64,000 bases of DNA, taken from positions 62,001 to 126,000 of IMG/VR virus record IMGVR_UViG_3300010938_000950, one strand, 5' to 3'. A program made the position numbers and the translations under genes. The notes under the pieces are model-generated. The model made no database searches and was not told the DNA's origin. It saw nothing but the letters and a program-made list of their open reading frames with translations. Below, in pieces: positions 17,451-58,365 of the stretch. Each line of letters begins with the position of its first letter. Positions within the stretch are counted from its first letter, which is position 1.

Positions 17451-17454
17451 TATC

Positions 17455-17467: not shown

Positions 17468-17477
17468 TGTCATAAGA

Positions 17478-29546: not shown

Positions 29547-32084
29547 TCATGCGGTTAGACCGCCAGCTCCATTCCAAGTTAAGTAAATTCCATTTTGTAG
29601 ATGTAGCCAGCGGGCTGTACCGTTAACAATTCCTCCGCTTGTATATACTCCATTACCCGTTGTTCCATTAAGAGTGAAATGAGTATTATCTATAACTGTA
29701 ATTACAAAAGTGCCATTGGCAGCAGTGTTACCATTAACACCCGAAATAACAACTGTTTGACCAGTTGTTAAACTATTGGCTGCAGAAGTTGTAATTTGAA
29801 TAGGTGAAGTGTTGCTGGCGCCAGTTACCGTAAGTGTAGCAGTGTTTTCTGTACTTAGAGTAAAAGTACCAAAATTAGTTCTACCTTGTCTAATAAATGG
29901 AGCAGTACCCATTAGTCTCTGATTTAATCCATAGGCCGTAATTCCTGCGCTTGGATAAGGCAGTACTAAAGCAGGGTCAGTTGCTATACCTGCCCATATT
30001 TCCCAAGGTAATACCTCGGTGGTTCCGGTGAATGGACAATCTCCTGCGTTGGATGAATATACAGTTGATGTTCCAGAAACGCCATCAGCGTTGGCCCATC
30101 CTGCCAAGGCACACATTTCAGGAGCAAAATCTCTGTATGTAAATCCTACATTAAAATTTGCTCCCCATCTAGCCTGTATTCCGCCATAATCTCCGGTGTT
30201 ATTTCCACCGTATATAAATGGTCTATTTGAATTTGCAGGGGGCGGAGATGGTTCGTTATCTGGCAATCCAAACGTTACAAATCCGCTGGTACCACCACCT
30301 TGCGGTCTAGTATATAAAAATACTGCTTGTCCACTATCATCTCCTACAATGGTAGTACGCGGTGCAAGAGAGACGTTGGCTGTTCCAATTAACGTATTTG
30401 CGTACTGTGTTCCTAAGTTGCTGGTTAAATCTAAATATTGAGATATATGGGTGGTTGTTCCGCCAATAGAAAAATCACCAGCCGCACTACCTCCGTAGCC
30501 TACACTTATTGATGCATAAGCTGGACCACCATTGATATTCCATGGTTCACCTGCTACTCTAACTTGCCATCCACTGGAGTGCGGACTTTGAAGTATTATT
30601 CTACTATTTTGTGACACATCGCTTCCTCCAGTATAACCAATGCGAGTGACGGTGCCTCCACCCGTATAGTTTCCGTTACCAGAAGATCCGTTCAAAGTAA
30701 ATATACCAGATCCAATTCTAGTAATTGTCCATGTACCATTGGCGGCCGTATTACCGTTCACACCGGAAATTGTAACTCTTTGTCCCGTATCAAAATATGA
30801 AACAGCATTAACGCTAACGTTAATTTGAATAGGAGTAGTATTTGTTGCGCCAGTTATAGAAACACCAGTAACTCTATTATTGTCACCAAGCAACAAATAT
30901 TCTGACATTCTTGTTTCAGTTTCATATAGCCACCAACTCATACCGCTTTCAGGAGGAGGCGTATCAGTTGATCTATATTCAATAGTATAAGAATTAGTTG
31001 CAGTATTGGTAGCAGTTATTTTAAAAACACCTGAATTTTTGGTTGGATATAAATTACTTTTAAGAACTAATATTCTGCCAGTATCTCCAGTTGTAGGTGC
31101 TGTGCCGTTCACAACTGTTCTCGTAGCAGTAGGAATTTGTACCGCATAAACGGAGGGCGCGCCACCAAAATTTATACTAGCTCCCGTTCCAGATGCCACT
31201 AGTAAGCCTTGTGGTAAAATTGAACACGAATTAGCAACATAAGCTCCAGCTAATGTTGTCCAGAGTAGTCTCATTTGTGTTGAGCTAATAACTTCTACTT
31301 TACTTGGACCAAAATTTCCAAGGTTGCTGCTAATACCGTACATACCAGTTCCACTACCAGATTGAATAGCGGTATAATCTCCAGTATTCATTCCGTGAGG
31401 GAATTGAGTTGTGATAGTAACAGGGTTGCCAGTAGCGGTGACAATTCTATTTGGACCACAAGCAACACCACCAACGCCAGCAGACGAAACATTATTACCA
31501 GTGTTCATTGTGCCAGTTCCACCAGTACAACCTGTAAAACTAGTTCCAGTAGTACCAGTGTAAGTGACTGTTTGTACGCCTGCAGTTGTTATGACATAAA
31601 TTGTTCCAGAAGTCGGAAATCCCGCCGTAGAAACAACGTTAATTGTTGCCGTAGGCAATGCAACGTTATTGGAACCTGCAGCAATAGTTGTTGTAAAGCC
31701 AGAAGACATTGTGCCAGTTCCGCCTGTACAATTAGTAAAGGTAGTAGCGGTAGTTCCAGAATATTTAACTATCTGTACACCATCACTAGTAGTTACGTAA
31801 ATAGTTCCAGAGGCTGGAAATCCTGTAGTTGAAGTTACGTTAATAGTTGCTTGGGGTAAAATCTGACCGTTGGAACCAGCCGCAATCGATGTGTTTTGAG
31901 ATATTGTAAAAGATTGGTTATTAGAATTGTTTAAATCAAATCCGGTGTGTCCTACAACAGAGTATCCTAATATCTTATTCAAAAATACAGCAGTATTAAA
32001 TAAATAAGATACGTGTGCAAAACTTGAAGCGCTCGTGTATCCGCTGGTAGAAGCTGTGAAATCTCGTAGTATATGAACTGTCAT
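29547..32084 (-). CDS. Virion-type scaffold X protein carrying 2 A and 3 B modules
   Basis: Shares H.LRD, GR.LVL.S, RIILQSP.S.GWQVR, GRTNFG, H...G.Y..W.G with 34036 and 36836. Confidence 0.75.
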   Translation of the reverse strand: MTVHILRDFTASTSGYTSASSFAHVSYLFNTAVFLNKILGYSVVGHTGFDLNNSNNQSFTISQNTSIAAGSNGQILPQATINVTSTTGFPASGTIYVTTSDGVQIVKYSGTTATTFTNCTGGTGTMSSGFTTTIAAGSNNVALPTATINVVSTAGFPTSGTIYVITTAGVQTVTYTGTTGTSFTGCTGGTGTMNTGNNVSSAGVGGVACGPNRIVTATGNPVTITTQFPHGMNTGDYTAIQSGSGTGMYGISSNLGNFGPSKVEVISSTQMRLLWTTLAGAYVANSCSILPQGLLVASGTGASINFGGAPSVYAVQIPTATRTVVNGTAPTTGDTGRILVLKSNLYPTKNSGVFKITATNTATNSYTIEYRSTDTPPPESGMSWWLYETETRMSEYLLLGDNNRVTGVSITGATNTTPIQINVSVNAVSYFDTGQRVTISGVNGNTAANGTWTITRIGSGIFTLNGSSGNGNYTGGGTVTRIGYTGGSDVSQNSRIILQSPHSSGWQVRVAGEPWNINGGPAYASISVGYGGSAAGDFSIGGTTTHISQYLDLTSNLGTQYANTLIGTANVSLAPRTTIVGDDSGQAVFLYTRPQGGGTSGFVTFGLPDNEPSPPPANSNRPFIYGGNNTGDYGGIQARWGANFNVGFTYRDFAPEMCALAGWANADGVSGTSTVYSSNAGDCPFTGTTEVLPWEIWAGIATDPALVLPYPSAGITAYGLNQRLMGTAPFIRQGRTNFGTFTLSTENTATLTVTGASNTSPIQITTSAANSLTTGQTVVISGVNGNTAANGTFVITVIDNTHFTLNGTTGNGVYTSGGIVNGTARWLHLQNGIYLTWNGAGGLTA

Positions 32085-34028
32085 TTAAGCTCCACTCGCA
32101 AGGAAATTGTATGGCAGTATTGCCCCATCCCATGGAAGACATATACCATTAACTAAGTGAATAAATTCACCACTATTGCCAATTAAGAAAAATGATGGCA
32201 ATCCTCCAAACGTAAGCCTAAATGGTCGCATTTTAGCTCTGGCAAATGAAAATTGTCCAGCAGTTGATGAAACTGACATTATGGCTTCTCCAGTCACAAC
32301 CTGTGCCAAACTTTTTTGAAATCCTAGTAATGAGTTTAAATTAAAACCCACAGTGTACGTAGGGCCTACAGTGGCATTAGCAGTATCACCAACTAAATTT
32401 CTACTAAGTAATTGGTGTGACCTGGTTATTCCATCAAACCCTGTCATTCCAAACGATGTACAAAAAGAATCAGTTCCAGTGCTGTTATTAAGAGCATTAC
32501 CTCCTACTAAAACTGCTATTAAATTTGGATCCTGAGTTTGTGAATATAATCTTAGAGGTGTGGTGGCCATAAAATAAAGTGCTGATGAACTATTTGTAGG
32601 AGATTTAACATGGGCAAAAATAAAATCAGTATCTGCAACTATAGATACAAACCCATTTGCACTAGCAGTTGTACCTGTAATACTACCAGTTCCGTTTGTT
32701 CTTTCGGTCATTGTGGCATTTGATCCAGAACCGGAAAATGCACTTCCATTCCAGCTACCATTTGGAGATCCAACTACTCCGAATAATCCGAAAGCATTTG
32801 CTGCACCTCTAAGTATAAATTGGAATTGTGATGGTACTGCACCAGGATTTATATTAGGGGCGCCAGTAAATGTACCAATAAAATAATTACCATTTGCTAT
32901 CGACAGTTGTGAAGCTGCCGTAACATCAATTACACGATAACTGAGAGAGGCTCTAGCAGTTAAATTATTCTTCAAAGTAGAGATATCAGTAGTTCCTCCA
33001 CTGAATGGTACAATCTTTACCTGGTCACTAGATGGTACTGCAATAATTCTATAAATGGAATCATCAGTACTAGGAGGATTAGTTGAAACTGATCCATTAG
33101 GCGATAGAGTGCCGGTTCCACCAGTGCAACCAGTAAATATCTGCCCAGTAACAGAATTGCCAGTTGTTAAAGTACCAGAACCACCTGAACATCCAGTAAA
33201 GCTCGTAGCTGTAATACCCGTATAAGTAACTATTTGTTGTACGTTTGAAGAGGTAGTGACATTAATAGTTCCAGATGTTGGGAAGCCTGTTGTAGAAGCT
33301 ACGTTGATAGTTGCTTGTGGCAATACTTGTCCGTTCGATGCGGCAGAAATTACGGTATTAATTATTCCAGTATAGTTAACAGTTTGTAGTCCACTACTGC
33401 TTAATATAAACAAAGTTCCGCTACTAGGAAATCCTACGGTAGATTGTACAGATATAGTGGCTTGTGGTAATGTCAAACCTGCGGATGCTGGGGCAATTCC
33501 ACTTCTAGGTCCAGCCAACCAAACAACTACGTGTTTTCCAATCATAGATTGAGAAAATGGTTGTGAAGAGGCGGCAGTTAGTGAGTCTCCAATTGCAGAA
33601 GTTACTCCATCATTTCCAACAGCAAGTACGGACGAGCCCTCAAAAAATCCAGTCGGACCACTTGTGGGTGATATTGGTATTCCACCGGGGACAGTGACTT
33701 GTCCACCACTCACATAGTTGGCGTTTCCTGTAGCGCCATTTAGAGCAAATTGTGTAGAATTAACAACAGTAACATTCCATCCACCATTAGCGGCGGTATT
33801 GCCCTGAACACCGTAGACTCCAACTAACTGGTTATTAGATAGTCCATGTGGAGTAGAGGTGGTAATTACGATCGGATTAGCATTGGATGCAGCCGTAACT
33901 GTAAGTATCGGTCTAGTACCATTTACACAATAGGACCAGAACTCGTAGCACAATTTCATAAAAATAGGTACATCCCTACCATTTGTGCCAGTTGTATATT
34001 GTAATCCTCTGAGAAATTTGATGGCCAT
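32085..34028 (-). CDS. Virion-type scaffold Y protein carrying 1 B and 2 nested A modules
   Basis: FLRGL.Y, YEFW.YCVNG, EG..VLA.GNDG, DSIY shared with 38606. Confidence 0.75.
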   Translation of the reverse strand: MAIKFLRGLQYTTGTNGRDVPIFMKLCYEFWSYCVNGTRPILTVTAASNANPIVITTSTPHGLSNNQLVGVYGVQGNTAANGGWNVTVVNSTQFALNGATGNANYVSGGQVTVPGGIPISPTSGPTGFFEGSSVLAVGNDGVTSAIGDSLTAASSQPFSQSMIGKHVVVWLAGPRSGIAPASAGLTLPQATISVQSTVGFPSSGTLFILSSSGLQTVNYTGIINTVISAASNGQVLPQATINVASTTGFPTSGTINVTTSSNVQQIVTYTGITATSFTGCSGGSGTLTTGNSVTGQIFTGCTGGTGTLSPNGSVSTNPPSTDDSIYRIIAVPSSDQVKIVPFSGGTTDISTLKNNLTARASLSYRVIDVTAASQLSIANGNYFIGTFTGAPNINPGAVPSQFQFILRGAANAFGLFGVVGSPNGSWNGSAFSGSGSNATMTERTNGTGSITGTTASANGFVSIVADTDFIFAHVKSPTNSSSALYFMATTPLRLYSQTQDPNLIAVLVGGNALNNSTGTDSFCTSFGMTGFDGITRSHQLLSRNLVGDTANATVGPTYTVGFNLNSLLGFQKSLAQVVTGEAIMSVSSTAGQFSFARAKMRPFRLTFGGLPSFFLIGNSGEFIHLVNGICLPWDGAILPYNFLASGA

Positions 34029-34035
34029 ATTTTCC

Positions 34036-36315
34036 TTAAGGTACTAGTGGGGGCCCGCCCCAAAAAATATACATTCCCCTTCGCATATGCTGAAAAGAAC
34101 GATTAGTATCGTGTGTTAACGTATATTCTCCAAAATTAGTTCTTCCTTCCCTTATATGCGGAATAGTTCCTATAAATCTTGCTTCTGTATTTGGAAAACC
34201 TACCCCACCTCCCCAATCGTTAACAGTGCCCCCTATCACATCTACAGATAATAATTCAGTTGCTCCTAACCAAGGATTATCTCCTGCGCTTCCATCAAAC
34301 ATAGGACTTCCGCCTTGCCCTACTCCGGAAACATACGTTAATAGAGATACTCCCGCTGATATTGGAACAGGGGTGGTAGTATTTTCATTTGCTTGCATAC
34401 TAACACCCTGGGAACGATTATTAATAGTAGTTGAAGTACCAAAAAGCCAACTACCATCATTTAAACTATTACCACTGCTTGATCCTAATCCACTTCCTAT
34501 ACAGTATAGTCGCGCTTCGTTATTCGCTGGAATTAGTGGCGGCTCAACTTCTGGCATACCAAATGATACATAAAATGATTTGGGATCGGTTGCATTTCCT
34601 GGCCTACGCCCAAACATTGTAACACCTAATCCATATCCATCATCTCCAATTATAGTATGTCTATATGAAATTGATGTTAGTGTACTAGTGTCTCCGCAAC
34701 CGGGAGCGCCACCAATATAAATGCTACTGTTACTATTATAATATAGTGGCGTATGTAAATGTCTACCAGCTACTGGAAAATCTCCGGCCGCATCACCACC
34801 AAATCCTGGTATGAAGGTAATTGGTGCACAGTTGCTTTGATCTGTATTTGTTTCATTGCAAATTCTAACCTGCCATCCAGTAGAGTTTGGGCTTTGTAAA
34901 ATTACACGTGGTGTAGTAGAATTACCATTGCCCCTGTACGACCCCGAAGGACTACTATTTACTGCTCCATTAGCTGGGGCATTAGCATCGCTGGCATATA
35001 AATACCAATTCATACTATCTGTAGGCTCAATTGGCGGCAAACTTGGAGAGTAGAAAACAGCTCCGCCAGTACTCATAACACCAGTACCGCCTGTACATCC
35101 TGTAAATGTAGTTGCCGTAATTCCAGTATATGATACTTGCTGTACGCCTGCTGCTGTGGTTACGAAGACAGTTCCAGATGGTGCAAATCCGGCACGGACA
35201 GCACCGCCAGTGGTCATTAATCCAGTACCGCCCGTACATCCTGTAAATGTAGTTGCGGTAGTTCCTGTATATGATACTGTTTGAGTGCCAGTGCTAGTGG
35301 TAACAAAAATAATACCAGTAGTAGGAAATCCAGTAGTTGAAACTACGTTAATAGTGCCTTGTGGTAATCTAACGTTATTGGATCCTGAAGCAATAGTTGT
35401 ACTTGCTGTATTTGTAGAAGCCACGTTAATGGTGGCCTGAGGTAAAGATTGTCCGTTAGAACCGGCGGCAATTGTGGTAGCTACTCCTGCTACAACCTGT
35501 GAACCACCAAGTATACTTCCGCTGCCTCCTGTACATCCTGTAAATGAGGTTGCAGTTGTACCGGTATAATTAACTGTTTGCCTGCCTGCTGGAGAGCATA
35601 TAAATATAGTTCCGCTCGTAGCAAATCCAGTAGTAGAAGTGACGTTAAGTGTAGCTGTAGGTAATGAGATACTAGCTATAACAGAGTTACCAGTAGACAT
35701 AGTGCCAGTACCTCCAGTACAACCTGTAAAAGTAGAGCCTGTAGTACCAGTATATGTAACTGTTTGTGTTCCAGCATTTGTAGCAACTAAAATGGTTCCA
35801 GATGTTGGGAAACCAGAAGTCGAGGCTACGTTAATGGTTCCTGTTGGTAAGGAAACGTTATTGGAAGCAGCGGCAATTGTGGTTGTACCACTAAGAAATG
35901 TACCAGTTCTATAGTTTATACGATAAGAGTTTGTGCTTGTATCATATCCATCAATAAGAAAACAACCAGAATTATATTGTGGATTAGTTGTGCTTCTTAA
36001 AACTAATAATCTGCCAACATCAACTTGACTAACTACTCTAGTGGCGACTGGAATAGAAACAAAGAACTCTTTTCCTGAACTTAAATTAATGCCAGCCCTA
36101 GTTCCTGCTGCGAAAGTTGGTGTGGCGGCTGTAGGAGTAGAGTCCGCTGTTGAAATTAATAAAGTACCAACTGAATTAATATTAAAATTAGTATCACCTA
36201 CATAAGTGTAAAGCAAAACTCTACGCAAAAAAATAGCCATTAAATAGGAAGGTATCCATTTCCTATTTGTACTAGTATCTTGTATTACGTAGTCTCTGAG
36301 TAAATGTCTTGCCAT
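34036..36315 (-). CDS. Virion-type scaffold X protein carrying 4 A modules (one nested)
   Basis: Close paralog of 36836 outside the inserts. Confidence 0.75.
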   Translation of the reverse strand: MARHLLRDYVIQDTSTNRKWIPSYLMAIFLRRVLLYTYVGDTNFNINSVGTLLISTADSTPTAATPTFAAGTRAGINLSSGKEFFVSIPVATRVVSQVDVGRLLVLRSTTNPQYNSGCFLIDGYDTSTNSYRINYRTGTFLSGTTTIAAASNNVSLPTGTINVASTSGFPTSGTILVATNAGTQTVTYTGTTGSTFTGCTGGTGTMSTGNSVIASISLPTATLNVTSTTGFATSGTIFICSPAGRQTVNYTGTTATSFTGCTGGSGSILGGSQVVAGVATTIAAGSNGQSLPQATINVASTNTASTTIASGSNNVRLPQGTINVVSTTGFPTTGIIFVTTSTGTQTVSYTGTTATTFTGCTGGTGLMTTGGAVRAGFAPSGTVFVTTAAGVQQVSYTGITATTFTGCTGGTGVMSTGGAVFYSPSLPPIEPTDSMNWYLYASDANAPANGAVNSSPSGSYRGNGNSTTPRVILQSPNSTGWQVRICNETNTDQSNCAPITFIPGFGGDAAGDFPVAGRHLHTPLYYNSNSSIYIGGAPGCGDTSTLTSISYRHTIIGDDGYGLGVTMFGRRPGNATDPKSFYVSFGMPEVEPPLIPANNEARLYCIGSGLGSSSGNSLNDGSWLFGTSTTINNRSQGVSMQANENTTTPVPISAGVSLLTYVSGVGQGGSPMFDGSAGDNPWLGATELLSVDVIGGTVNDWGGGVGFPNTEARFIGTIPHIREGRTNFGEYTLTHDTNRSFQHMRRGMYIFWGGPPLVP

Positions 36316-36323
36316 ATTTTACC

Positions 36324-36839
36324 TTATTGAATCCATCGTCCAACTATTTTAATATCTATTAATGGATTTCCAGATGGTGGAGTGTAGAAAATTCCTAAAT
36401 CTACATTTGGTGGGCTGCTGTTTGGGTTAATCGGCAAGCTACCAGGAGTATTAAATAATTCTGGTCGTGGCACTATATTTTCTGCAATTACCCAAGTTTC
36501 ATACGAACTAGTATTTGGGTTGTATCCGGATACTTTATAGTAGATAGTTTGATCCTTAGGATGTGTCAAAATGGGGTTATTATCTACTTGTATAGATTGT
36601 GGCGCCAGAATTGGCCTGGTATCAAAATTAGTAGTAATTCCATTGTATACTTGATCTCCGGCAGATCCTATAATGTTGTTTACATTGACGGCATCATAGT
36701 TGCTAGCTAAACCACCATAATCTTGCAAAGATGATCCTCTCGCCAGATCAAAATCGGCACTGGCAAAAGTATTGGCTTGTCCACCAAAATTTTCACTAGA
36801 TCCAAAGTTGGTAATTGTTAAATCAAAAGCATAGCTCAT
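36324..36839 (-). CDS. Structural-cluster protein Z2 with YYK..Y..W module
   Basis: YYKVSGYNPNTSSYETW...PPSGNPLIDIKIVGRW; start moved to ATG 36839 (ATGA overlap). Confidence 0.7.
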   Translation of the reverse strand: MSYAFDLTITNFGSSENFGGQANTFASADFDLARGSSLQDYGGLASNYDAVNVNNIIGSAGDQVYNGITTNFDTRPILAPQSIQVDNNPILTHPKDQTIYYKVSGYNPNTSSYETWVIAENIVPRPELFNTPGSLPINPNSSPPNVDLGIFYTPPSGNPLIDIKIVGRWIQ

Positions 36840-38596
36840 GGTATTGTTTGTGGTCCATTCCAAGTAACGTAAACTCCTCGCTTTAAATGCATCCAACTAT
36901 GGTTGGCTTCGGTTGTTATCGAGAAGTTTCCAAAGTTTGATCTTCCTGCTCTTAAATGTGGTATTGTTCCTAGTATTCTGGGTTCTAGTGGCATTGAAGC
37001 TTCAATGCCTGCATTTCCATTCCAAGTGTTAAATGTACCAGCTATTAAATCTACAGAGAATAATTCTGTACTTAAACTCCATGGACTATCTGCTGCACTA
37101 CCATCAAATATTGGACTTCCAAATTGTCCAACACCGGATACATAAGTCCATAGGGACGGTGCACAACTACAAATAATTCCTCCTTGAGTTTGTGTTACTC
37201 CTTGCAGAAACGGGTTATGATTTGCATCACCAAAGCTACCAGCATAAATAATTCCAGGAGTCCAGGTAATATCATTTAGATTATCACCAAATCCGTTATT
37301 TCCTCCCGTGCTAAGACTGCTGCCTAGAACAAATAATCTTGCTACATTATTAACTGGTAATGGCAGTGGTTCATTTTCTGCTAAACCGAATGACGCAATA
37401 TAATTTTTTGGTCTTCCAGCATTGGATGGGTCTCGCCAGAAGCGGCTAAAAATAACTACACCCTGCCCAGTGTCGTCTCCAACTAGTGTTATTCTAAATT
37501 GCATCTGTTGATATTGTGATGGACTGTATGGAATACCGAATGATCCGGAATCGTCCCCAAATCCAGGAGCCATTCCTACATATTTAGTGGTGTTATTTGT
37601 GTTGTACCATAATGGACCATGCAGGTGCGGGCCTGCAACAGCAAAATCACCTGCTGAATTGCCGCCAAATCCTGGTATAGCTGTGATTAAAGGAACATTT
37701 CCATAATTACCATTGGTTTGAATATTTTGACTATAATCAGCAAAAGTCTCATGGCATAATCTTACTTGCCAACCCAATGAGTGTGGACTTTGTAAAATTA
37801 TACGCGGTGTAGTGGAGTTACCATAACCGCCATATGTACCATTGTTAACGCCCACCCAAGTACTATTTGGCGCACCTGATGTTGGAGTTAAAGTTTCAGC
37901 AGCATATAGATACCAGTTCATGCTATCGTATGGTTCAACAGGTGGATATCCCGTAGCCCCCATTGTTCTGTAGTCAATTATGTAACAGTTTGTTACTACA
38001 GTTCCTCCGCCAGCATATGCTCCATTACCCGTTGTTCCATTGAGCGTAAATTGCGTATTATTTAATACAGTAATGGTAAAAGTTCCATTAGCATTCGTGT
38101 TTCCAGTAACTCCCGAAATAGTTACTGTTTGTCCTGTAGTTAGGGCATGTGGTGCTGTAGTTGTTACCTGTATCGGGGAAACAGCATTGCCTGAGGTGGT
38201 AGACACACTATAGTTAAGCGCTTCAAAACCAGTAATTAAAAATATACCAGAATTGAATGTAGAGTTGGCTGTACTTCTTAATACCAGCAACCTGCCTACG
38301 TCAGAAAAACTAACAGTCCTTACTGAAGGAGGAACCCATACATAAAATTCTCTTCCGGTACCTTGATTAATACCAGCTTTAGTACCCACTGCGAAAGTTG
38401 GAGATCCTGTAGGCGTAGAGTCTGGAGTAGCAATTAACAAAGTTCCTACAGCGTTGATAGGATAGTTTGTATCACCAACATAACTATACAAAAGTATTCT
38501 TCTTAAAAAGATACTCATGAGATAGCCTGGTACCCACTGCCTACTAGCCGTAGTGATATTTTGAGTAACATAATCTCTAACTGTGTGTATAGCCAT
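36836..38596 (-). CDS. Virion-type scaffold X protein carrying 1 B module
   Basis: Paralog of 34036 and 29547. Confidence 0.75.
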   Translation of the reverse strand: MAIHTVRDYVTQNITTASRQWVPGYLMSIFLRRILLYSYVGDTNYPINAVGTLLIATPDSTPTGSPTFAVGTKAGINQGTGREFYVWVPPSVRTVSFSDVGRLLVLRSTANSTFNSGIFLITGFEALNYSVSTTSGNAVSPIQVTTTAPHALTTGQTVTISGVTGNTNANGTFTITVLNNTQFTLNGTTGNGAYAGGGTVVTNCYIIDYRTMGATGYPPVEPYDSMNWYLYAAETLTPTSGAPNSTWVGVNNGTYGGYGNSTTPRIILQSPHSLGWQVRLCHETFADYSQNIQTNGNYGNVPLITAIPGFGGNSAGDFAVAGPHLHGPLWYNTNNTTKYVGMAPGFGDDSGSFGIPYSPSQYQQMQFRITLVGDDTGQGVVIFSRFWRDPSNAGRPKNYIASFGLAENEPLPLPVNNVARLFVLGSSLSTGGNNGFGDNLNDITWTPGIIYAGSFGDANHNPFLQGVTQTQGGIICSCAPSLWTYVSGVGQFGSPIFDGSAADSPWSLSTELFSVDLIAGTFNTWNGNAGIEASMPLEPRILGTIPHLRAGRSNFGNFSITTEANHSWMHLKRGVYVTWNGPQTIP

Positions 38597-38605
38597 ATCG
38601 ATTCC

Positions 38606-41600
38606 TTATATAATGTAGAACAAGCTAGATGGAAGTATTGTATTATCCCAAATAATGGCAATACCATTTTGAGTATTTAAGAATTGGCCAGTTGCTGTAC
38701 CAAATCTGTGATAGAGTGGCAAGGTAGTTCCTGTAAACTTTAATGTTCTTAATTTAACTCTACCCAAAGAATATTGTCCGGTTACTCCTGGTAGTGATAA
38801 TACACCATCTGAAGCTAGTACTGTACCTCTTGTAGTATTAAATGTTAATCTAATATCAGTTAAGTTAGACCCAAATGTTGGAGTACCATCTCCGCCTAGT
38901 GACTTAGCAAGCATTCTATAAGTTCTTATGGTGCCAGTTGTATCTTTCATAACGAATCCATTACCGATAGTTCCGCTGTTACCGCTAGTTCCGTCGCATC
39001 TAAATACTGAACCGTTAAATACTCCACCTCTACTTAATACTGCCACAGGATTTGTATCAGCGGCTTGAGTATAAAGTCTTATTGGAATTTCACAATGTAG
39101 ATACGAGGATGCATCACCACTGTTTACATCTTTGAAATGCATCCAGAAAAATGCAGGATCGGCAGCCATAGTCATAGCCATAGTGTTTGCTGGAATACCG
39201 TTGAAAATACCTCCACTTTGACTAGTAAACTGTGTTGTAGCATCTGTTTGAGGATCTCCTGTTACTGGGAAAGTAAGTCCATTCCAGTTGCCGCCTGGTG
39301 ATATAATGGTTCCAATAGTACCCGCAGTATCGTTGCCAAATAACTGTATTTGACTATTGGCTTGCCCTGGATTTATTCCAATGGATGAAGGATTGAACTG
39401 CATAACCATATAGTTACCGTTACCGCTACTGAATGTTTGAGCAAGACCAGCATCTACTATTCTGTAATTAATATTACTTCTTTGAGTAAATGACGGGTGC
39501 AAATTAGTTGGGTCTGGTGTTCCGCCAGTATTCAAATTAATTCTGATAGAATTTGGACTATTTACGGCTGTAATTATGTAAATACTATCTTCTGTAGTTC
39601 CAGAATTTGGCTTCCACATAATCAATAGCTTACCTACCATATTGCTAGTTGTAACAGTTTGAGTGCCGCCACTTGTCCATGAGCCGTTTGGAGTAGAGTT
39701 GTTTAATATAATACTATTACGATTGGCAATTGAGCCACCGCTGGTATAAGCACCACTAGCAATTGTACCATTTAGTGTTGCAACTCTATTACTAATTACT
39801 GTTGTTAATGCTGTAGTGTTAGCGTTTGGTAAACCATTAATACCAGATGTTATTACAGTTTGTCCAGTTAATAGTGTATGGAAATCAGATGTAGTAATGG
39901 TAATTGGTGACAGTATAGTATTACCAGTAGTCATAGCTCCGGTACCGCCAGAACATCCTGTAAATGTTGTGGCAGTAGTTCCTGTGTAGGATACAATTTG
40001 GTTTCCGGTACTGGTCATAATTGTAAATGAACCAGTTTGTGCAAAACTAATAAACACAGGATTACCTGTAGTCATAGTTCCGGTGCCGCCAGAACATCCT
40101 GTAAAAGAAGTGCCCGTGGTACCAGTATACGTTACAGGTTGATATCCGGTAGTTGTTAATACATATATGTAACCGCTAGTTGGGAAACCTGTAGTTGAAG
40201 CTACGTTAATAGTAGCTTGTGGCAGTACTTGTCCACTGGATGCGACTGCAATTGAAGTGTAATTGCTAGCTGGAGAGAAGGCTGTGAACACCGATCCGCC
40301 AGCAGAAGTGCTTCCCGTACCACCTGAGCATCCAGTTAGTGATGTGGCACTTACGCCAGTATAATTTATTAGTTGAGAACCGGCTGAGGTAGTAATGTAC
40401 AATGAACCGGCAGTTGGAAAATTAGTAAAAAATCCAGTGTTATTTACTGTGTTGCCAGTAAACATAGTTCCGAATCCGCCCAATGCACCAGTGAAGGAAG
40501 TGCCGGTTACACCAGTATAGGTAACTGTTTGATTGAATGGTCCGCCGCCAATTGGAATACCAATCAACAGAGTACCAGTTCCGCCCGTACATCCTGTAAA
40601 TGAAGTTGAAGTTAGTCCCGTATAAGAAACCGAAGTGGCCGCATAAACAACACCACCAGTTGACATGGTTCCACCACCACCAGAACATCCAGTGAAGGAA
40701 GTTCCTGTGGTACCCGTGTATGTGACTATCTGTGCACCAGAGCTTGTTGTTACATAAATAGTTCCAGAAGCCGCAAATCCTACTGTCGAGGCTACGTTAA
40801 TAGTGCCTTGTGGTAATGCCTGTCCGTTGGAGCCGGCAGCGATAGTTGTTTGAATAGAGTTGTCTGCTACACTGAGAGTTCCGCTAGTTGGAAATCCATT
40901 AGTAGTAGATACATTAATAGTTGATTGAGGTAATGATTGACCACTAGATCCTAGTGCAATACTAGTTACTACTGTAGTGGCAATATTTAATGTACCTGTC
41001 GTTGGAAATCCGGTAGTTGAAACTACGTTAATCGTACCGGTTGGCAATGCGATATTGTTAGATCCTGATGCAATGGTCGTACTTGCCGTTGCTGTGGCGG
41101 CTACGTTGATTGTAGCTGTTGGTAATGCTTGAATGCCAGTAGTGGTTGTGAAAGGTGCAGCAGTATTTGCATTAACAGTTGCCTGTGGCAAAGATGCTCC
41201 ATTCGATGGAAAACCAGTTGTGGTATTAAAGTATGTTGCATTGGAAATATTGTTAGTTGGGGTGGTAATTATCCAAGTTCCATTGGCAGTTGTATTTCCA
41301 GTGACGCCACTTACTACAACAGATCCTAAATTAGAATAAGAGTTCGCGGCCGTCATATTAACTGATATTGGTGCAGTTACTGCCCCACCAGTTGACATAG
41401 TGCCAGTACCACCAGAGCAACCAGTAAAGGTTGTTCCTGTAATACCGGTATAAGTAACTGTTTGTACACCACCGCTAGTCGTAACGTTAATTGTTCCACT
41501 GCTTGGGAATCCGATGGTGACAGTACCACCAGTTTGCATGGAACCACGTCCTAGAGTACATCCAGTAAAAGTAGTGGCCGTAATACCTGTGTACAGCACT

Positions 41601-42373
41601 TGTTGGATGCCTTCAGTAGTTTGTACATTTAAATATCCACCAGAAGGAAAACCAGTAGTGGATGCTACGTTGATAGTACCAGTAGGTAGTGAAACGTTGT
41701 TAGAAGAGGCTGCGATGGTTGTGCTAGCGGTTGTAGTAGAAGCAACGTTTATGGTAGCCTGAGGTAAAGATTGTCCGTTAGATCCCGCAGCAATAGTAGT
41801 TCTGTAATTAGAAACATTGTTAATTGTAAAGCTAGTAGCGGCACTTGTAAATGGATTGACATTGGTTGCACTGAAAACAGCATCCCCACTGACAGACGTA
41901 CTAACCTGAGCAGCAGTGTATCCATCATTTCCGATTGCTAAAACAGGGGTTCCTTCTGTAAAATTAACTGGCCATGCGAATGGGGTAGTATTAATGACAC
42001 CGCCGCCAGTATACGATCCATTTCCAGTTGATCCGTTTAAGCTAAATGTGGTTGTAGAAGTAACTGTAATTTGAAAAGTTCCGTTAGCGGCCAAATTTCC
42101 TAATACTCCAGAAATTGTAACTTGTTGTCCAGTAAATAGTGCGTGAGTTGTTGTAGTAGTAATAACGATTGGAGATACGCCAGCGCCTGTGGTATTTGAT
42201 ACGTTGTATGAAATGCTCATGGTGTTTGCAAATCCACCAGGCGTTTGCAAGCCGGTTCCACCATTAACGCAGTATCCCCAGAACTCATAGAGTACTTTTA
42301 AGAACTCGGAGGCTCTTCCAGTTTGGTTATAATTGTAAAATAGTCCTCGACAGAACCTTAGTGAAGTTGGCAT
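38606..42373 (-). CDS. Virion-type scaffold Y protein with a ~730-aa nested insert (8 A and 3 B modules in total)
   Basis: Paralog of 32085; see findings. Confidence 0.75.
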   Translation of the reverse strand: MPTSLRFCRGLFYNYNQTGRASEFLKVLYEFWGYCVNGGTGLQTPGGFANTMSISYNVSNTTGAGVSPIVITTTTTHALFTGQQVTISGVLGNLAANGTFQITVTSTTTFSLNGSTGNGSYTGGGVINTTPFAWPVNFTEGTPVLAIGNDGYTAAQVSTSVSGDAVFSATNVNPFTSAATSFTINNVSNYRTTIAAGSNGQSLPQATINVASTTTASTTIAASSNNVSLPTGTINVASTTGFPSGGYLNVQTTEGIQQVLYTGITATTFTGCTLGRGSMQTGGTVTIGFPSSGTINVTTSGGVQTVTYTGITGTTFTGCSGGTGTMSTGGAVTAPISVNMTAANSYSNLGSVVVSGVTGNTTANGTWIITTPTNNISNATYFNTTTGFPSNGASLPQATVNANTAAPFTTTTGIQALPTATINVAATATASTTIASGSNNIALPTGTINVVSTTGFPTTGTLNIATTVVTSIALGSSGQSLPQSTINVSTTNGFPTSGTLSVADNSIQTTIAAGSNGQALPQGTINVASTVGFAASGTIYVTTSSGAQIVTYTGTTGTSFTGCSGGGGTMSTGGVVYAATSVSYTGLTSTSFTGCTGGTGTLLIGIPIGGGPFNQTVTYTGVTGTSFTGALGGFGTMFTGNTVNNTGFFTNFPTAGSLYITTSAGSQLINYTGVSATSLTGCSGGTGSTSAGGSVFTAFSPASNYTSIAVASSGQVLPQATINVASTTGFPTSGYIYVLTTTGYQPVTYTGTTGTSFTGCSGGTGTMTTGNPVFISFAQTGSFTIMTSTGNQIVSYTGTTATTFTGCSGGTGAMTTGNTILSPITITTSDFHTLLTGQTVITSGINGLPNANTTALTTVISNRVATLNGTIASGAYTSGGSIANRNSIILNNSTPNGSWTSGGTQTVTTSNMVGKLLIMWKPNSGTTEDSIYIITAVNSPNSIRINLNTGGTPDPTNLHPSFTQRSNINYRIVDAGLAQTFSSGNGNYMVMQFNPSSIGINPGQANSQIQLFGNDTAGTIGTIISPGGNWNGLTFPVTGDPQTDATTQFTSQSGGIFNGIPANTMAMTMAADPAFFWMHFKDVNSGDASSYLHCEIPIRLYTQAADTNPVAVLSRGGVFNGSVFRCDGTSGNSGTIGNGFVMKDTTGTIRTYRMLAKSLGGDGTPTFGSNLTDIRLTFNTTRGTVLASDGVLSLPGVTGQYSLGRVKLRTLKFTGTTLPLYHRFGTATGQFLNTQNGIAIIWDNTILPSSLFYII

Positions 42374-42393
42374 TTATTCTCCGTTTAACCAAA

Positions 42394-42406
42394 ATGTCGT
42401 ATTATT
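42394..42406 (-). promoter_or_regulatory. Candidate phage promoter motif
   Basis: Minus strand aataa tacg acat, 20 nt before the start at 42373. Confidence 0.45.
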
Positions 42407-42412
42407 GCGTGT

Positions 42413-43372: not shown

Positions 43373-43374
43373 GA

Positions 43375-45038: not shown

Positions 45039-45045
45039 TCATGCC

Positions 45046-49978: not shown

Positions 49979-52900
49979 ATGGCAATACAGTACTATATGC
50001 GAGCCTACAATACAACTTTGTCCCAATATGTGGACTGGGTTGTAAATGATGCGCCAGACAGTATAGGAACTTTTTCTGGTTACCCAACTAACCAACTAGT
50101 CAATATTACTGTTAATAGAGTAGTACAGTCAAAAGTTGAGAATTTTCTAAAACCGAACCAATCTTTAGGTGGTACGGACGGCCTCTTCTTCCACGTTAAT
50201 AGTTACGATTGGCGAAATGCTGTTACCCCTATTCCCCCTCCTACCAGCTATACTGGTTTTCAGATTGAAAGAGGCGTAAATTTCGTCTCTAATATTACAT
50301 CGGCCTCCAATACTGCACCTATTACGATTACGACATCTTCCAATCATAATTTAGTAACTGGCCAAATTGTAACTATTAATGGAGTTTCTGGTAACGTAGC
50401 CGCTAATGGTAGCTGGCCCATTGTAGTTACTGGTTTAACCACTTTTACCCTAACCGGTTCTGTAGGTTCAGGAAATTCTGTTGTTGGTGGTAGTGTTTTT
50501 ACTCCGAGAGATATGTCTTCCCTTATTTGGGATGAACTGGGTGATATCTGGAGATTTGTTTTAAATACCAATGGTGATGGAACTTCTCTCGGAGCATCAC
50601 AATCTCTCAGCGTTAATAATCTACTTGTTGATGGTTTTCTGGCCCTTGGTTCTGACCCGGCTGATACTGGAATTATCAGAATTCCAAATAATCAATATAT
50701 CTTTTCTGAATCTAATCCAAGTGGAACTGATGTTCAACTAATTGGCGCTGATTTATTTAATAGAATTAAACTCGGAAGTACAGTAACTGATATTGTTTAT
50801 ACTCCAGGTGTTGTAGTAGTTGATGGATACGTGCAGCATGATGGAACTAGTGGAAATATCGCTGCTTCAACTGGATTTATTCGTGAGCAAAATAATACGA
50901 CCATAGTTGCATTCAAGAATGTTAATCAGTCATTTTCTGACATAGCGGCATTATCATCAAATTCATTTAATAATATAGTAATAGGCGATACAGTTAATAC
51001 GGGCACCATTCATAATACAGCCAGTGGTGTATTTAATATCACCGCTGCCACTGCCGCTAGTCCAGTTCAGATTACAGTATCTGCTCCAACTACTTTCGTT
51101 ACCGGACAAAGTGTTACGATCAATGGAATCACTGGTACCATCGGAACCGATCCAACTAATGGATTAAATGGTAAAACATTTGCAATTGTAGTATTGAGCC
51201 CAACTCAATTTACACTTACTGGATCTAACGGTACGGGATTAGCTTACACCAGTGGTGGTACAGTCACTACAAATAACGTTCATTCATTCCAGGTAGGTGG
51301 AACAACTCAAGTCGAAATTGGTGCTCCTTTTGTTAGATTTCCGTCTGGAATTACTTCACCATTCATCTATCAGCTTCCGGCTGCCCCAAGCACTAGCGGA
51401 CAAAATCTAACTATTCAATCTCAGAATGCTGGATTAGGCGGATCCAACGGTGGTAATTTAACTCTAACAACCGGTACTGGTACAACTAATGGTATCATTA
51501 ATTTACAGACTGGTGGAGTAACTAGAATAACATTAAGCGATACAACCGAAACTCATATTCATCAAATAATTACATTTGCTAATACTGTCGCTAACCCAAT
51601 CATTACCCAAAATACCGCAACTGCTGCTGCTGGTACTACGCTAACTGTACAGGCACAAGCAACTTCATTAGCCGCTTCTGCTGGCGGTAATTTAGCACTC
51701 AGCTCTGGAGCTGGCACATCTCAGTCTGGAAATGTATTCATTCAAACTGGAGGAACTACACAAATTGTTGTTTCCCCTTTGACTATCGCCCCAAGTGATG
51801 CAACTTTCGGTCCACCAACCAGCGGAACAGTTATCATTAAAGGCAATTTAGAAGTTCAAGGAGCAATGACTACCGTAGAAAGTACGGTTGTTGATATAAT
51901 TGGTAGAGTCATCCACGCTAATTGGGCAGATCCAATTGGATCTCCAAACGTTGCTCGTCCAACACAAAATGTTGGCTATAGCATCCATAGAGGCAACGTA
52001 GGTGGCCAGCCACGTGATGGTGCTGCTTGGATATGGACTGAAGGCGCACTTGATGGCGGAGCCGATGGTTATTGGAGAGCTGTAACTATCCATGGTGATG
52101 GCTATGGAACTGATAACTTCAATATTACAAACTCTATAAGTGCTGTTGGAGTAATGGGCAATGACTTTGTTGCAAGTTCTGACCCTGCACCTGTTTTAGG
52201 TTATATTGCCGCTAGTGGAAGTTTGAGAACAGCTAATAATGTTCCAGTAGCTGTTTCTAGAGACATCACAGCAACCACAACGGTCACCGCAGCCTCAAAC
52301 TTAGCTACGCTGCCTCAAGGAACTATAAACGTAGTTTCAACTGCTGCATTTACTACCTCTGGAACATTGCTAGTTCTATCATCAACTGGTGTTCAAACTA
52401 TTACCTATACTGGTACGACCGGAACAAGTTTTACGGGATGTGTTGGTGGTACTGGTACAATTATTACAGGTAGTATTGTTGGTCAAACTAATAATAGCAC
52501 TACTATTGCTGCTCCATCCAACGGACAAATACTTCCTCAAGGAACAATTAACGTAGTTTCAACCACCGGATTCCCTCAAGCCGGAACTCTGCGCATTTAT
52601 ACCACTACTAGCACGGGTGGTATTCAGAATGTGTCGTACACAGGTACCACTGCTACCAGCTTCACCGGATGTACTGGCGGTACCGGAACTCTAAATACTG
52701 GAAATATTGTAACTAGTATTCCTGCAACTGGAACTCAAGATTTAGTCCTACTGGGAACTGACTTCGGTAATCGTATTCTTCATGGAGCGCCAACCAGTAA
52801 TGCTGGTCATATCTTTAATACGACCACTGGATCTATTTATGACTTCCAGATTAATAGTGTATCTCAGGTTCAACTAAGGGGTGATACTGACGTAGATACA

Positions 52901-56410: not shown

Positions 56411-56419
56411 CTGATTACC

Positions 56420-57067: not shown

Positions 57068-57075
57068 GTATTATC

Positions 57076-57726: not shown

Positions 57727-58025
57727 CCTATTTCTTTAACTATAATTTCATCTGGTAAAAAACCGAAGGTAGACGGTTTAAAAGGAATATCCTTAAACCC
57801 TCCTGCTTTTGGGTTGATAATGAGCCGCCATCCCATCAAATAATTATTACACACGTCATATCTGCAATCTTCAGTTTCGAATATGATTCCACTGTAATCT
57901 TTGCATGAATACTTCTCGTATTCAAATTTAGTTGGGTAAAGAAACATATAGTTTCCTAACTGACATGCCGTACAATCTTTGTGGGTTTCAAGAAATACTG
58001 CAAGTTCTTTTTCTAAACTTTCCAT
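57723..58025 (-). CDS. Hypothetical protein
   Basis: ORF; start moved to MESLEKE. Confidence 0.55.
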   Translation of the reverse strand: MESLEKELAVFLETHKDCTACQLGNYMFLYPTKFEYEKYSCKDYSGIIFETEDCRYDVCNNYLMGWRLIINPKAGGFKDIPFKPSTFGFLPDEIIVKEIG

Positions 58026-58358: not shown

Positions 58359-58365
58359 AATAACC

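What the first reader, a model, noticed from the sequence alone, without database searches (positions are those of the whole stretch)
35194..41782. The nested A[A] pair appears to have moved as a cassette between genes
Seen: the junction TINVA(S/A)T(N/T/A)-TASTTIA(S/A)(G/S)SNN(V/I).LP occurs once in 34036 and twice in 38606. A 26-nt stretch (gcctgaggtaaagattgtccgttaga) is identical at 35435-35460 and 41757-41782, although the host scaffolds X and Y are very divergent. Inference: recent copying or gene conversion of composite modules.
Basis: partly seen in the sequence, partly recalled or inferred. Interest (0 to 1): 0.6.

Follow-up and report, generated by a model that had tools for sequence, protein, structure and literature searches.

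The report
Nested barrel repeats in phage proteins
Two neighbouring structural genes of a very large phage carry a 66-residue beta-barrel module inserted inside other copies of itself, up to five deep. The copy-in-copy unit they share is old and conserved in related phages, not a recent transfer between the genes.

Summary

Synonymous difference between the nested-pair copies (pS 0.64 outer, 0.63 inner) sits in the middle of all 190 A-unit pairs (median 0.66). Same-genome and cross-genome paralogue identities are equal (about 0.67). The A[A] architecture is kept in more than 50 orthologues down to 52-58% identity. Equally long identical runs (29, 26 and 25 nt) link non-nested A units.

What is there:
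- 'A' is a 66-aa module with no Pfam match, modelled as a small six-stranded beta-barrel.
- Whole copies are inserted into three loops of other copies.
- HMM pieces form balanced brackets, [A][[[[A]]]A] in gene 38606.
- AlphaFold models (pLDDT 88-95) reassemble the split halves into single barrels.
- Nesting depth differs between orthologues, and one inner nest has been exchanged between phage lineages.

The closest precedent is the recursively nested hybrid-motif domains of cyanobacterial RNA polymerase Si3. A short conversion tract (about 30 nt or less) may explain the 26-mer.

The parts
34036..36315 (-). Gene g34036 (759 aa, P0001). It has an N-terminal scaffold domain, the A array 'A A [A]', and a C-terminal domain of about 330 aa. 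It belongs to scaffold family 1, together with g36836.
   Evidence: ORF list and translation; HMM pieces; paralogue BLASTP with A masked.
35686..35883 (-). Unit 34_a, a complete A module (HMM columns 1-66).
   Evidence: hmmsearch domain 1, 96.5 bits.
35500..35673 (-). Unit 34_b, a complete but N-terminally short A module (HMM columns 9-66).
   Evidence: hmmsearch domain 2, 80.2 bits.
35413..35478 (-). Unit 34_O, N-terminal piece (columns 1-22) of the split outer A unit. It contains the 26-nt identity at 35435-35460.
   Evidence: hmmsearch domain 3; pattern search.
35203..35400 (-). Unit 34_I, a complete A module inserted into 34_O after column 22 (insertion site a).
   Evidence: hmmsearch domain 4, 97.5 bits. 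In the AF2 model, residues 163-235 form one barrel.
35062..35196 (-). Unit 34_O, C-terminal piece (columns 22-66) of the split outer unit.
   Evidence: hmmsearch domain 5. Structural alignments spanning model residues 136-282 with only about 70 aligned residues show that the N and C pieces form one barrel.
38606..42373 (-). Gene g38606 (1255 aa, P0002). It has E1_FCCH-type barrels, the A arrays '[A]' and '[[[[A]]]A]', and a C-terminal domain of about 430 aa. It belongs to scaffold family 2, together with g32085.
   Evidence: Translation; Pfam; HMM pieces.
41384..41800 (-). Nest 1. Outer unit 38_O1 is split (N piece 41735-41800, C piece 41384-41521) around the complete inner unit 38_I1 (41525-41722). 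It contains the second copy of the 26-mer (41757-41782).
   Evidence: hmmsearch domains 1-3. Conserved in all 24 orthologues examined.
39920..41224 (-). Nest 2, five levels deep.
- X: N piece 41159-41224, C piece 39920-40051.
- O2 inside X: N piece 41093-41131, C piece 40295-40441.
- I2 inside O2: N piece 40973-41080, C piece 40451-40534.
- J inside I2: N piece 40865-40966, C piece 40559-40642.
- K, complete, inside J: 40652-40849.
- T, complete, also inside X after O2: 40061-40258.
   Evidence: hmmsearch domains 4-13 have complementary cut points: N34/C38, N36/C39, N28/C18, N29/C23. AF2 model pLDDT 88.2. Single-barrel structural matches span model residues 26-319 (O2), 49-268 (I2) and 1-443 (X).
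33102..33500 (-). Nest in the neighbouring gene g32085. Outer unit 32_O is cut at column 48/49 (insertion site c) by the complete unit 32_I (33156-33356).
   Evidence: hmmsearch domains 1-3 of ORF 32088-34043.
31494..31892 (-). Two tandem complete A units (29_a and 29_b) in g29547, not nested.
   Evidence: hmmsearch, 100.0 and 102.4 bits.
48823..49020 (+). Single complete A unit (46_a) in gene 46534-49482 on the opposite strand. It shares a 29-nt identical run (48856-48884) with unit 34_I (35339-35367).
52277..52705 (+). Two complete A units (49_a and 49_b) in gene 49979-54673.
   Evidence: hmmsearch, 87.5 and 92.1 bits.

Best explanation
The interval lies in a block of structural genes of a very large phage. 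The virion role is inferred from context only.

What the genes contain. Their middle segments are built from 'A', a 66-residue module with no Pfam match, modelled as a small six-stranded beta-barrel. The inserts join their hosts through linkers of only 2-5 residues. From this I infer that the barrel's two ends lie side by side, so that a whole copy can sit in a surface loop of another copy without breaking it. Coordinates could not be inspected to confirm this. Three loops accept inserts:
- site a, after column 22, in the long loop between strands 2 and 3;
- site b, columns 36-38, the hairpin turn between strands 3 and 4;
- site c, column 48/49, the turn between strands 5 and 6.
Repeated insertion has produced Russian-doll architectures: A A [A] in g34036 and [A] ... 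[[[[A]]]A] in g38606.

The A[A] composite in g34036 and the first one in g38606 are ancient. They are fixed in every orthologue found and saturated at synonymous sites. They have not been copied or homogenised recently. I judge it somewhat more likely than not (about 0.55) that these composites descend from one ancestral composite that was duplicated into a second scaffold. The alternative is independent insertion at the same permissive loop.

The 26-nt identity. It is specific to this genome. It is either chance or a conversion tract of about 30 nt or less, and it carries no information about the composite as a unit.

How the architecture evolves (shown by comparing orthologues):
- single A units are gained or lost inside other units;
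- a whole inner nest has been exchanged between phage lineages at the orthologous place.

Inferred function. The nests form compact, branched clusters of barrels in the variable middle of virion-surface (fibre or decoration) proteins. Conserved N- and C-terminal domains would do the anchoring and the distal work.
For: Module and nesting:
- An HMM built from the genome's own copies finds 20 A units in the 209,766-bp assembly, 6 of them split.
- The split pieces have complementary HMM coordinates and form balanced brackets. The spliced halves read as normal full-length A units.
- AlphaFold2 with orthologue alignments gives pLDDT 94.8 for P0001:141-422 and 88.2 for P0002:380-822.
- VIA-align matches the contiguous inner unit (model 163-235) to small beta-barrels at Z 5-7.7, rmsd 2.2-2.6 A, over 62-71 residues. 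The targets are phage tail-tube and tail-tip decorations, EF-Tu domain 2, the F1/V1-ATPase N-terminal barrel, the P22 I-domain and UBA1 FCCH.
The split halves therefore rebuild single barrels.
- The insertion sites fall in loops or turns of the DSSP string.

Age:
- pS is 0.641 and 0.625 for the composite's units, against a median of 0.66.
- Composite nt identity is 68% over 424 nt.
- Same-genome identity equals cross-genome identity.
- 30 of 34 close relatives of g34036 (58-90% identity) parse as A A [A]. All 24 g38606 orthologues keep nest 1.
- Units group by position across genomes. SH-aLRT supports: 34b 94, 38O1 85, 38X 98, 38T 95, 38J 94.
- The nearest relatives with DNA are only 74-76% identical over the cluster, yet they share the architecture.

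Ongoing change:
- Orthologue architectures are [[A]A], [[[A]]A], [[[[A]]]A] and [[[[A]]][A]].
- Tin, the insert in unit T, groups with K, while its host groups with T.
- P0126 and P0127 are 85-95% identical to P0002 except across aa 441-640, where identity is 20-67%. There they are 72-78% identical to distant orthologues.

Context:
- A neighbouring gene matches phrog_1645 'virion structural protein' and the cyanophage S-RIM12 virion structural protein.
- Three concanavalin-like lectin genes lie alongside.
- Synteny is conserved on 340-498-kb metagenomic contigs.
Against: - The structures are predictions. No coordinates could be inspected, so reassembly of the split barrels rests on the first and last aligned residues and the aligned lengths reported by the aligner.
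- All structural Z-scores are below 8, so the fold assignment is a class resemblance, not homology.
- The 66-column unit trees are poorly resolved. Inner units 34_I and 38_I1 group only weakly (63-81), and 38_I2 does not join them. Common descent of the three junctions is therefore not shown.
- The site-a linker (T-x-x-A-S/T) also appears at the separately derived T[Tin] junction. That weakens the junction motif as evidence of shared ancestry.
- No experimental or proteomic evidence places these proteins in the virion, and no family library names their N- or C-terminal domains.
- Long identical runs among A units are in excess: 8 pairs of 20 nt or more against 2.6 expected, P = 0.0055. Some short-tract exchange between units probably does occur.
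Confidence: 0.8

Rival explanations
1. One reading: the whole A[A] composite was copied, or homogenised by gene conversion, between g34036 and g38606 recently.
For: There is an exact 26-nt identity inside otherwise divergent genes. The two composites align collinearly over 424 nt. The junction motif is shared.
Against: - pS of the outer and inner pairs ranks 72 and 59 of 190, that is, like random A pairs.
- Overall nt identity is 68%.
- Same-genome paralogue identity equals cross-genome identity.
- The nest is conserved in orthologues at 52-58% identity.
- Units cluster by position, not by genome.
Confidence: 0.03
2. A short gene-conversion tract of about 30 nt or less, from g38606 into g34036, arose in this genome's lineage and produced the 26-mer. 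It is one of several short exchanges among A units. This is compatible with the best explanation.
For: - The run of 26 is seen only in the window's own pair. Eleven other valid g34/g38 comparisons, within and between genomes, give runs of 11-18.
- P = 0.005-0.008 for this pair alone.
- Within the tract, the window's g34036 uses TTA CCT CAG like g38606, whereas all three g34036 orthologues use CTA CCA CAA or TTG CCG CAA.
- Identical runs of 20 nt or more are in excess in the family: 8 against 2.6 expected, P = 0.0055.
- Units 34_I and 34_O are 87% identical over 75-81 nt at their 3' ends, more than either is to its orthologue.
Against: - With 190 pairs tested, some pair reaches 26 in 18% of column-wise codon shuffles.
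- Only three informative synonymous sites support the direction of transfer.
- Three of the four runs of 25 nt or more involve one shared tract (34_I / 46_a / 38_K), which may be retained ancestry or position-specific codon preference.
Confidence: 0.35
3. The three 'T-x-T-A-S' junctions arose by independent insertions of single A units into the same permissive loop. No composite was ever copied between genes, and the similarity of site and linker is structural convergence.
For: - A separately derived insertion at the same site, T[Tin] in the P0043 clade, has a similar linker (T-S-V-A-T/S). Its insert groups with K and its host groups with T.
- Site a accounts for 110 of 195 closed insertions in the homologues fetched.
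- In the large unit tree, 38_I2 does not group with 34_I or 38_I1.
Against: - All three junctions combine the same outer subtype (NGQ) with the same inner subtype (NNV/NNI).
- 34_O and 38_O1 are the most similar pair at 82% aa and group at 85/90.
- 38_I1 nests within 34_I.
- AU tests do not reject monophyly of the outers or of the inners, p = 0.32-0.51.
Confidence: 0.4
4. There is no domain nesting. The region is a fibre or solenoid built from two kinds of sub-repeat (an N-type hairpin and a C-type meander) in variable order, and the brackets are an artefact of the HMM.
For: The composition is low-complexity and rich in T, G and S. The partial HMM matches are short.
Against: - N and C pieces are equal in number and pair in strict bracket order with complementary cut points, in dozens of independent assemblies.
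- The AF2 models are confident, and single-barrel alignments span the discontinuous pieces.
- Spliced pieces recreate canonical 66-aa units.
Confidence: 0.03

Closest known systems
Recursively nested hybrid-motif (SBHM/HABAS) domains of the Si3 insertion in the cyanobacterial RNA polymerase beta' subunit (rpoC2)
   Same: A small beta-rich domain is inserted into loops of further copies of the same fold, giving A1-B1-C-B2-A2 patterns several levels deep. Six levels and eight domains are reported for Prochlorococcus rpoC2, and depth varies between lineages (PMC13114784). Here there are five levels (X > O2 > I2 > J > K), with depth varying between orthologues.
   Different: - It is a different domain family and fold class.
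- The host is a virion-type structural protein of a phage rather than a core enzyme.
- Three distinct insertion sites are used within one 66-aa module.
- The nest differs between orthologues of about 80-88% aa identity and has been exchanged between genomes.
- The copies are still 55-80% identical in sequence, so their kinship is visible without structures.
E1_FCCH-type (PF16190) six-stranded barrels that decorate phage tail-tube and tail-tip proteins
   Same: The same proteins carry true PF16190 matches (g38606 aa 71-128 at 40 bits; also g36836, g29547 and g49979). In paralogue g36836, an FCCH barrel occupies the slot where g34036 has its A array. FCCH barrels face outward on siphophage tail tubes (PMC13576161). 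The A model resembles UBA1 FCCH at Z 4.5-4.9.
   Different: The A module has no Pfam match. It also shows no profile-level similarity to the FCCH-like domains of these proteins: hhalign probability 0.05%. FCCH copies here are not nested.
Insertion-type small barrels: the phage P22 coat I-domain, EF-Tu domain 2 and the F1/V1-ATPase N-terminal barrel
   Same: VIA-align matches one A unit to these at Z 5.4-6.5, rmsd 2.2-2.6 A, over 63-71 residues. Small barrels of this class often occur as inserts or add-ons to larger folds (my own knowledge).
   Different: All Z-scores are below 8 and sequence identity is 4-18%, so only a common arrangement is shown. None of these is known to me to be inserted into copies of itself.
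Tandem Ig-like or BACON-type decoration domains on phage structural proteins (from my own knowledge, not tested here)
   Same: Small beta domains are added in variable number to virion-surface proteins. They are thought to give weak carbohydrate binding or to act as spacers.
   Different: Those arrays are beads on a string. Here the copies are nested, which should give a branched, compact cluster rather than a chain.

Membership tests
Recently duplicated or gene-converted paralogous segment | Synonymous divergence between the copies clearly below that of other family pairs | tested here: not met
   pS is 0.641 (rank 72 of 190) and 0.625 (rank 59 of 190), against a median of 0.66. Mean nt identity is 0.6175, against 0.60 under random synonymous codons.
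Recently duplicated or gene-converted paralogous segment | Paralogues within one genome more alike than paralogues taken from different genomes (concerted evolution) | tested here: not met
   Same genome: 0.669, 0.676, 0.652. Cross-genome: 0.628-0.681. Units cluster by position, not by genome.
Recently duplicated or gene-converted paralogous segment | Identical tracts longer than chance allows | tested here: inconclusive
   For the focus pair, P = 0.005-0.008. Some pair among the 190 reaches 26 nt or more in 18% of shuffles. Across the family there is an excess of runs of 20 nt or more, 8 against 2.6, P = 0.0055. The run is seen only in this genome.
Recursive (nested) domain-insertion architecture, as in RNA polymerase Si3 | The host domain's sequence is interrupted by a complete domain, with complementary host halves on either side | tested here: met
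   HMM coordinates pair as N28/C21, N36/C39, N34/C38, N29/C23 and N50/C47. The spliced halves give full units.
Recursive (nested) domain-insertion architecture, as in RNA polymerase Si3 | The interrupted halves fold together into one domain | tested here: met
   This holds in predicted models only. Single-barrel alignments of 65-72 residues span model ranges 136-282, 26-319, 49-268 and 1-443. Model pLDDT is 94.8 and 88.2.
Recursive (nested) domain-insertion architecture, as in RNA polymerase Si3 | Inserted domains themselves host further inserts (three or more levels) | tested here: met
   g38606 has five levels, [[[[A]]]A]. Nine of the 146 fetched homologues that carry an A piece reach level 5.
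Pfam PF16190 E1_FCCH | The A module matches the family profile at or above the gathering score | tested here: not met
   There is no Pfam match over any A unit. P0001, whose middle consists only of A units, has 0 Pfam families. hhalign of A against the proteins' own FCCH-like domains gives probability 0.05%. Other segments of the same proteins do pass: g38606 aa 71-128 scores 40 bits against a cut-off of 29.5.
Elongation-factor domain-2-like / F1-ATPase N-terminal small beta-barrel fold | Structural match well above background that covers the domain | tested here: inconclusive
   Z is 5-7.7, rmsd 2.2-2.6 A, and 62-72 of 66-73 residues align. The tool's own note says that Z below 8 may mean only a common arrangement. 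Foldseek found no hit with E of 0.001 or better.
Phage tail fibre or receptor-binding protein | Homology to a named tail-fibre, tailspike or baseplate family, or presence in virion proteomes | tested here: inconclusive
   The five large proteins have no PHROG or Pfam tail family. Neighbouring genes match virion structural proteins. In other proteins, A modules sit beside pectate-lyase-like beta-helices (precomputed Pfam hits). Virion proteomics cannot be done with these tools.

The most novel reading that the evidence does not exclude
The A module is a self-inserting building block. It may form a naturally evolvable, fractal-like display scaffold in which phages gain, lose and swap whole nested barrels at three permissive loops. 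Changes in nest depth or content would then retune how the fibre or decoration proteins bind the host surface, so nesting would act as a host-range diversification mechanism. This would be a second, and still active, example of deep homotypic domain recursion after RNA polymerase Si3.
Probability: 0.2. Interest if true: 0.7.

Novelty: new member of a known kind. Interest (0 to 1): 0.45.

Why it matters
For the scan, the specific claim of a recently moved cassette should be dropped.

What remains is a clean natural example of recursive self-insertion of a protein domain. The copies are still recognisably alike in sequence. Intermediate depths (2, 3, 4 and 5 levels) coexist among related phages, and one inner nest has been exchanged between lineages. 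That makes the order and mechanism of domain insertion testable in a way that the old, fixed RNA polymerase Si3 nests do not allow.

The finding also defines three loops of a 66-residue barrel that tolerate a whole-domain insert, which is of practical interest for protein engineering.

It flags a widespread module that Pfam does not match. The profile finds 2,509 cluster representatives at E of 0.001 or better, and in the few of them scanned against Pfam the module sits beside surface-type domains (pectate-lyase-like beta-helix, PMP repeats).

Tried and rejected
- Megablast and tblastn of the region and of P0001 against the phage collection found no match. The family is known only from metagenomic contigs, and no named relative is available.
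- Foldseek against the PDB with the four-unit model gave nothing at E of 0.001 or better. Only the exhaustive VIA search gave usable single-barrel matches.
- Unit trees were built for 20 units from this genome and for 232 units from orthologues. The backbones are too weakly supported to decide between common descent of the three junctions and independent insertion. AU tests reject nothing (p = 0.32-0.51).
- hhalign of A against the FCCH-like domains found no relationship, so I rejected the idea that A is simply a divergent FCCH.
- The C-terminal domain of P0001 gave no informative match in the ESM Atlas (scores 0.84 or less, TM 0.36 or less) or among PDB sequences.
- I tried to infer gain versus loss of unit K from the tree of orthologue C-terminal domains. 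This is confounded, because the inner nest of P0126 and P0127 is a recombinant segment.
- I considered whether a single homologous crossover between units could remove or add a nested unit. It cannot: it leaves an unbalanced N-C-C or N-N-C product. The DNA-level mechanism of insertion therefore remains open.
- The reads tools and the complex predictor were not used, because no claim here depends on them.

Full report
**Setting.** The window is bases 62001-126000 of a single 209,766-bp contig. It encodes ribonucleotide reductase, PhoH, DnaB-type and other helicases, a DNA polymerase exonuclease, ThyX, DHFR, GMP reductase and an M23 peptidase, together with virion-type genes. This is the gene content of a large phage. 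Exact or near-exact copies of the proteins studied here lie on metagenomic contigs of 340-511 kb. The finding lies in a minus-strand block at 29547-46428. That block holds five large proteins (g29547, g32085, g34036, g36836, g38606), a small ORF, three concanavalin-like lectin genes and a 460-aa gene. The block is syntenic in relatives L001, L002 and L003.

**Check of the observation.** The 26-mer is present exactly twice, at the stated places. The junction motif is present once in g34036 and twice in g38606, and nowhere else in the assembly. With the repeat modules masked, g34036 and g38606 share no detectable similarity. Instead g34036 pairs with g36836 (63% over the first 126 aa, 47% over the last 370 aa), and g38606 pairs with g32085. 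The description is therefore correct.

**What the 'A' module is.**
- An HMM grown from one copy finds 20 units of 66 residues in the assembly.
- Six units are split. In each case an N-terminal piece, one or more complete units and a C-terminal piece follow each other. The HMM coordinates of the two pieces are complementary.
- Written as brackets, g34036 is A A [A], g38606 is [A] ... [[[[A]]]A], and g32085 is [A] with a different cut point.
- Splicing the halves gives sequences that align column for column with intact units.
- Three cut points are used: after column 22, at columns 36-38, and at column 48/49.
- AlphaFold2 with orthologue alignments gave confident models (pLDDT 94.8 and 88.2). 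By the DSSP strings, the three cut points fall in loops or turns.
- An exhaustive structural search matched the contiguous units to small six-stranded barrels at Z 5-7.7. The targets were phage tail-tube and tail-tip decorations, EF-Tu domain 2, ATPase N-terminal barrels, the P22 I-domain and UBA1 FCCH.
- The same folds matched discontinuous ranges (136-282, 26-319, 49-268 and 1-443) with only about 65-72 aligned residues. That is what reassembled split barrels should give.
- The module has no Pfam match and no profile similarity to the true FCCH domains present elsewhere in the same proteins.
- It is widespread: 2,509 cluster representatives match at E of 0.001 or better. About a quarter of the new top representatives show some nesting. 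In other proteins it sits beside pectate-lyase-like beta-helices, PMP repeats and other surface-type domains.

**Test of the inference (recent copying or conversion of the composite).**
- I built an in-register codon alignment of all 20 units and computed Nei-Gojobori values for all 190 pairs.
- The outer/outer pair (34_O, 38_O1) has pS 0.641, rank 72. The inner/inner pair (34_I, 38_I1) has pS 0.625, rank 59. The median is 0.66.
- Redrawing synonymous codons at random gives a mean nt identity of 0.60, against 0.6175 observed, so synonymous sites are close to saturation.
- The composite as a whole is 68% identical over 424 nt. Several single-unit pairs reach 72-77%.
- As a control that cannot involve conversion, I compared the g34036 composite of one genome with the g38606 composite of another. 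Identity was 0.628-0.681, the same as within genomes (0.652-0.676).
- In a tree of 232 units taken from orthologues, units group by position, not by genome.
- 30 of 34 close relatives of g34036 parse as A A [A]. All 24 orthologues of g38606 keep the first nest, down to 52-58% identity.
- The nearest relatives with DNA are only 74-76% identical across the block.
- The composite is therefore much older than the time needed to saturate synonymous sites.

**The 26-mer itself.**
- Among the 190 in-register pairs there are also identical runs of 29 nt (34_I with 46_a, a gene on the other strand), 26 nt (34_I with 38_K) and 25 nt.
- When codons are shuffled among units that carry the same residue in the same column, some pair reaches 26 in 18% of trials. 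The focus pair alone reaches it in 0.8% of trials. The number of runs of 20 nt or more (8) exceeds expectation (2.6; P = 0.0055).
- The run is peculiar to this genome. Eleven other valid g34/g38 comparisons give 11-18.
- Inside the tract, the window's g34036 carries g38606-type synonymous codons at three consecutive positions where its three orthologues differ.
- A conversion tract of about 30 nt or less is a fair reading (I put it at about 0.35). Such a tract is not movement of the composite.
- A second possible short tract joins the 3' ends of 34_I and 34_O inside g34036. They are 87% identical over 75-81 nt, more than either is to its orthologue.

**Did the composite ever move as a unit?**
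- In favour: the three junctions share the site, a T-x-T-A-S linker, and the order of subtypes (outer 'NGQ', inner 'NNV/NNI'). The two outers are the most similar pair in the genome (82% aa) and group together (85/90). 38_I1 falls inside 34_I. Because the scaffolds are unrelated, one old copy event is a simple explanation.
- Against: in one clade of g38606 orthologues, unit T has acquired an insert at the same site with a similar linker. There the insert is K-like and the host is T-like, so a single unit entered on its own. Site a is also the commonest site overall.
- I leave this at roughly 55:40 in favour of common descent.

**How the architecture changes.**
- Orthologues of g38606 show [[A]A], [[[A]]A], [[[[A]]]A] and [[[[A]]][A]].
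- P0126 and P0127 are 85-95% identical to the window's protein everywhere except aa 441-640 (window 40454-41053). There they carry a shallower nest that is 72-78% identical to distant orthologues.
- Nested modules therefore do travel as cassettes, but between genomes at the same locus, not between these two genes.
- A single homologous crossover between units cannot add or remove a nested unit cleanly, so the DNA mechanism of insertion is open.

**Comparison with what is known.**
- Domain insertion is common, but deep recursion is rare. The published extreme is the six-level nest of hybrid-motif domains in the cyanobacterial RNA polymerase beta' Si3 region (PMC13114784).
- The present case works the same way, with a different and still sequence-similar module, in phage structural proteins, and with depth varying between related phages.
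- FCCH-type barrels are known outward-facing decorations of phage tail tubes (PMC13576161). In paralogue g36836, such a barrel occupies the slot that holds the A array in g34036.

**Verdict.** The real feature is a recursively nested barrel repeat, a new member of a known kind and of moderate interest.

Noticed in passing
window 40454-41053 (g38606 aa 441-640), compared with P0126 and P0127 (locus L002 10001-13555): Close orthologues are 85-95% identical along the protein but only 20-67% identical across the inner nest. There they carry one level less and resemble distant orthologues (72-78%). The inner nest appears to have been exchanged between phage lineages.
   Followed up: partly
window 40061-40258 (unit T of g38606), compared with P0043, P0128, P0129 and others: Unit T is intact here. 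In several orthologues it hosts an extra A unit at site a. That insert groups with unit K and its host groups with T, so this is a separate single-unit insertion.
   Followed up: partly
window 35057-35137 and 35198-35278 (3' ends of units 34_O and 34_I in g34036): These two stretches are 87.7% identical over 81 nt, the highest nt identity among all A pairs. Each is more like the other than like its own orthologue (73-80%). This may be a short intragenic conversion tract.
   Followed up: partly
window 35339-35367 (minus strand) and 48856-48884 (plus strand); also 40792-40817: A 29-nt identical run links unit 34_I and unit 46_a, which lie in genes on opposite strands. The same tract is shared over 26 nt with unit 38_K.
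   Followed up: partly
window 33102-33500 (g32085): A third kind of nest: the outer A unit is cut at column 48/49, between 'YTG' and 'FTGC', by a complete unit.
   Followed up: partly
window 36836-38596 (g36836) compared with 34036-36315 (g34036): These paralogues share N- and C-terminal domains (63% and 47% identity). Between those domains, g36836 has a single E1_FCCH barrel where g34036 has the A A [A] array. The middle of these proteins behaves as an exchangeable slot.
   Followed up: partly
window 42413-45038: Three tandem paralogous genes encode concanavalin-like (Laminin_G_3) proteins next to the large repeat proteins. The arrangement is conserved in L001-L003.
   Followed up: no
whole assembly (G000) and contigs carrying identical proteins: The held assembly is 209,766 bp, but proteins identical or nearly identical to P0001 and P0002 are recorded on a 490,849-bp contig. 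Relatives lie on 340-511-kb contigs. The phage genome is probably about 0.5 Mb, so the held assembly would be partial.
   Followed up: no
window 55895-59409 and 14946-19186: The structural block is flanked by nucleotide-metabolism genes: DHFR, ThyX, GMP reductase/IMPDH-type dehydrogenase, ribonucleotide reductase, PhoH and a thymidylate-kinase-like gene.
   Followed up: no
window 36324-36896 and 36836-38596: The mechanical ORF 36324-36896 (TTG start) overlaps the 3' end of g36836 by 61 nt. Relatives have a gene of 164-194 aa here, in some cases also overlapping. The true start is uncertain.
   Followed up: no
window 46534-49482 and 49979-54673: Two large plus-strand genes also carry A units. 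Gene 46534-49482 also has an ice-binding-like beta-roll match (PF21300), and gene 49979-54673 an E1_FCCH match (PF16190). The A module is therefore shared by at least seven genes of this genome, including one outside the window at genome 22981-24081.
   Followed up: partly
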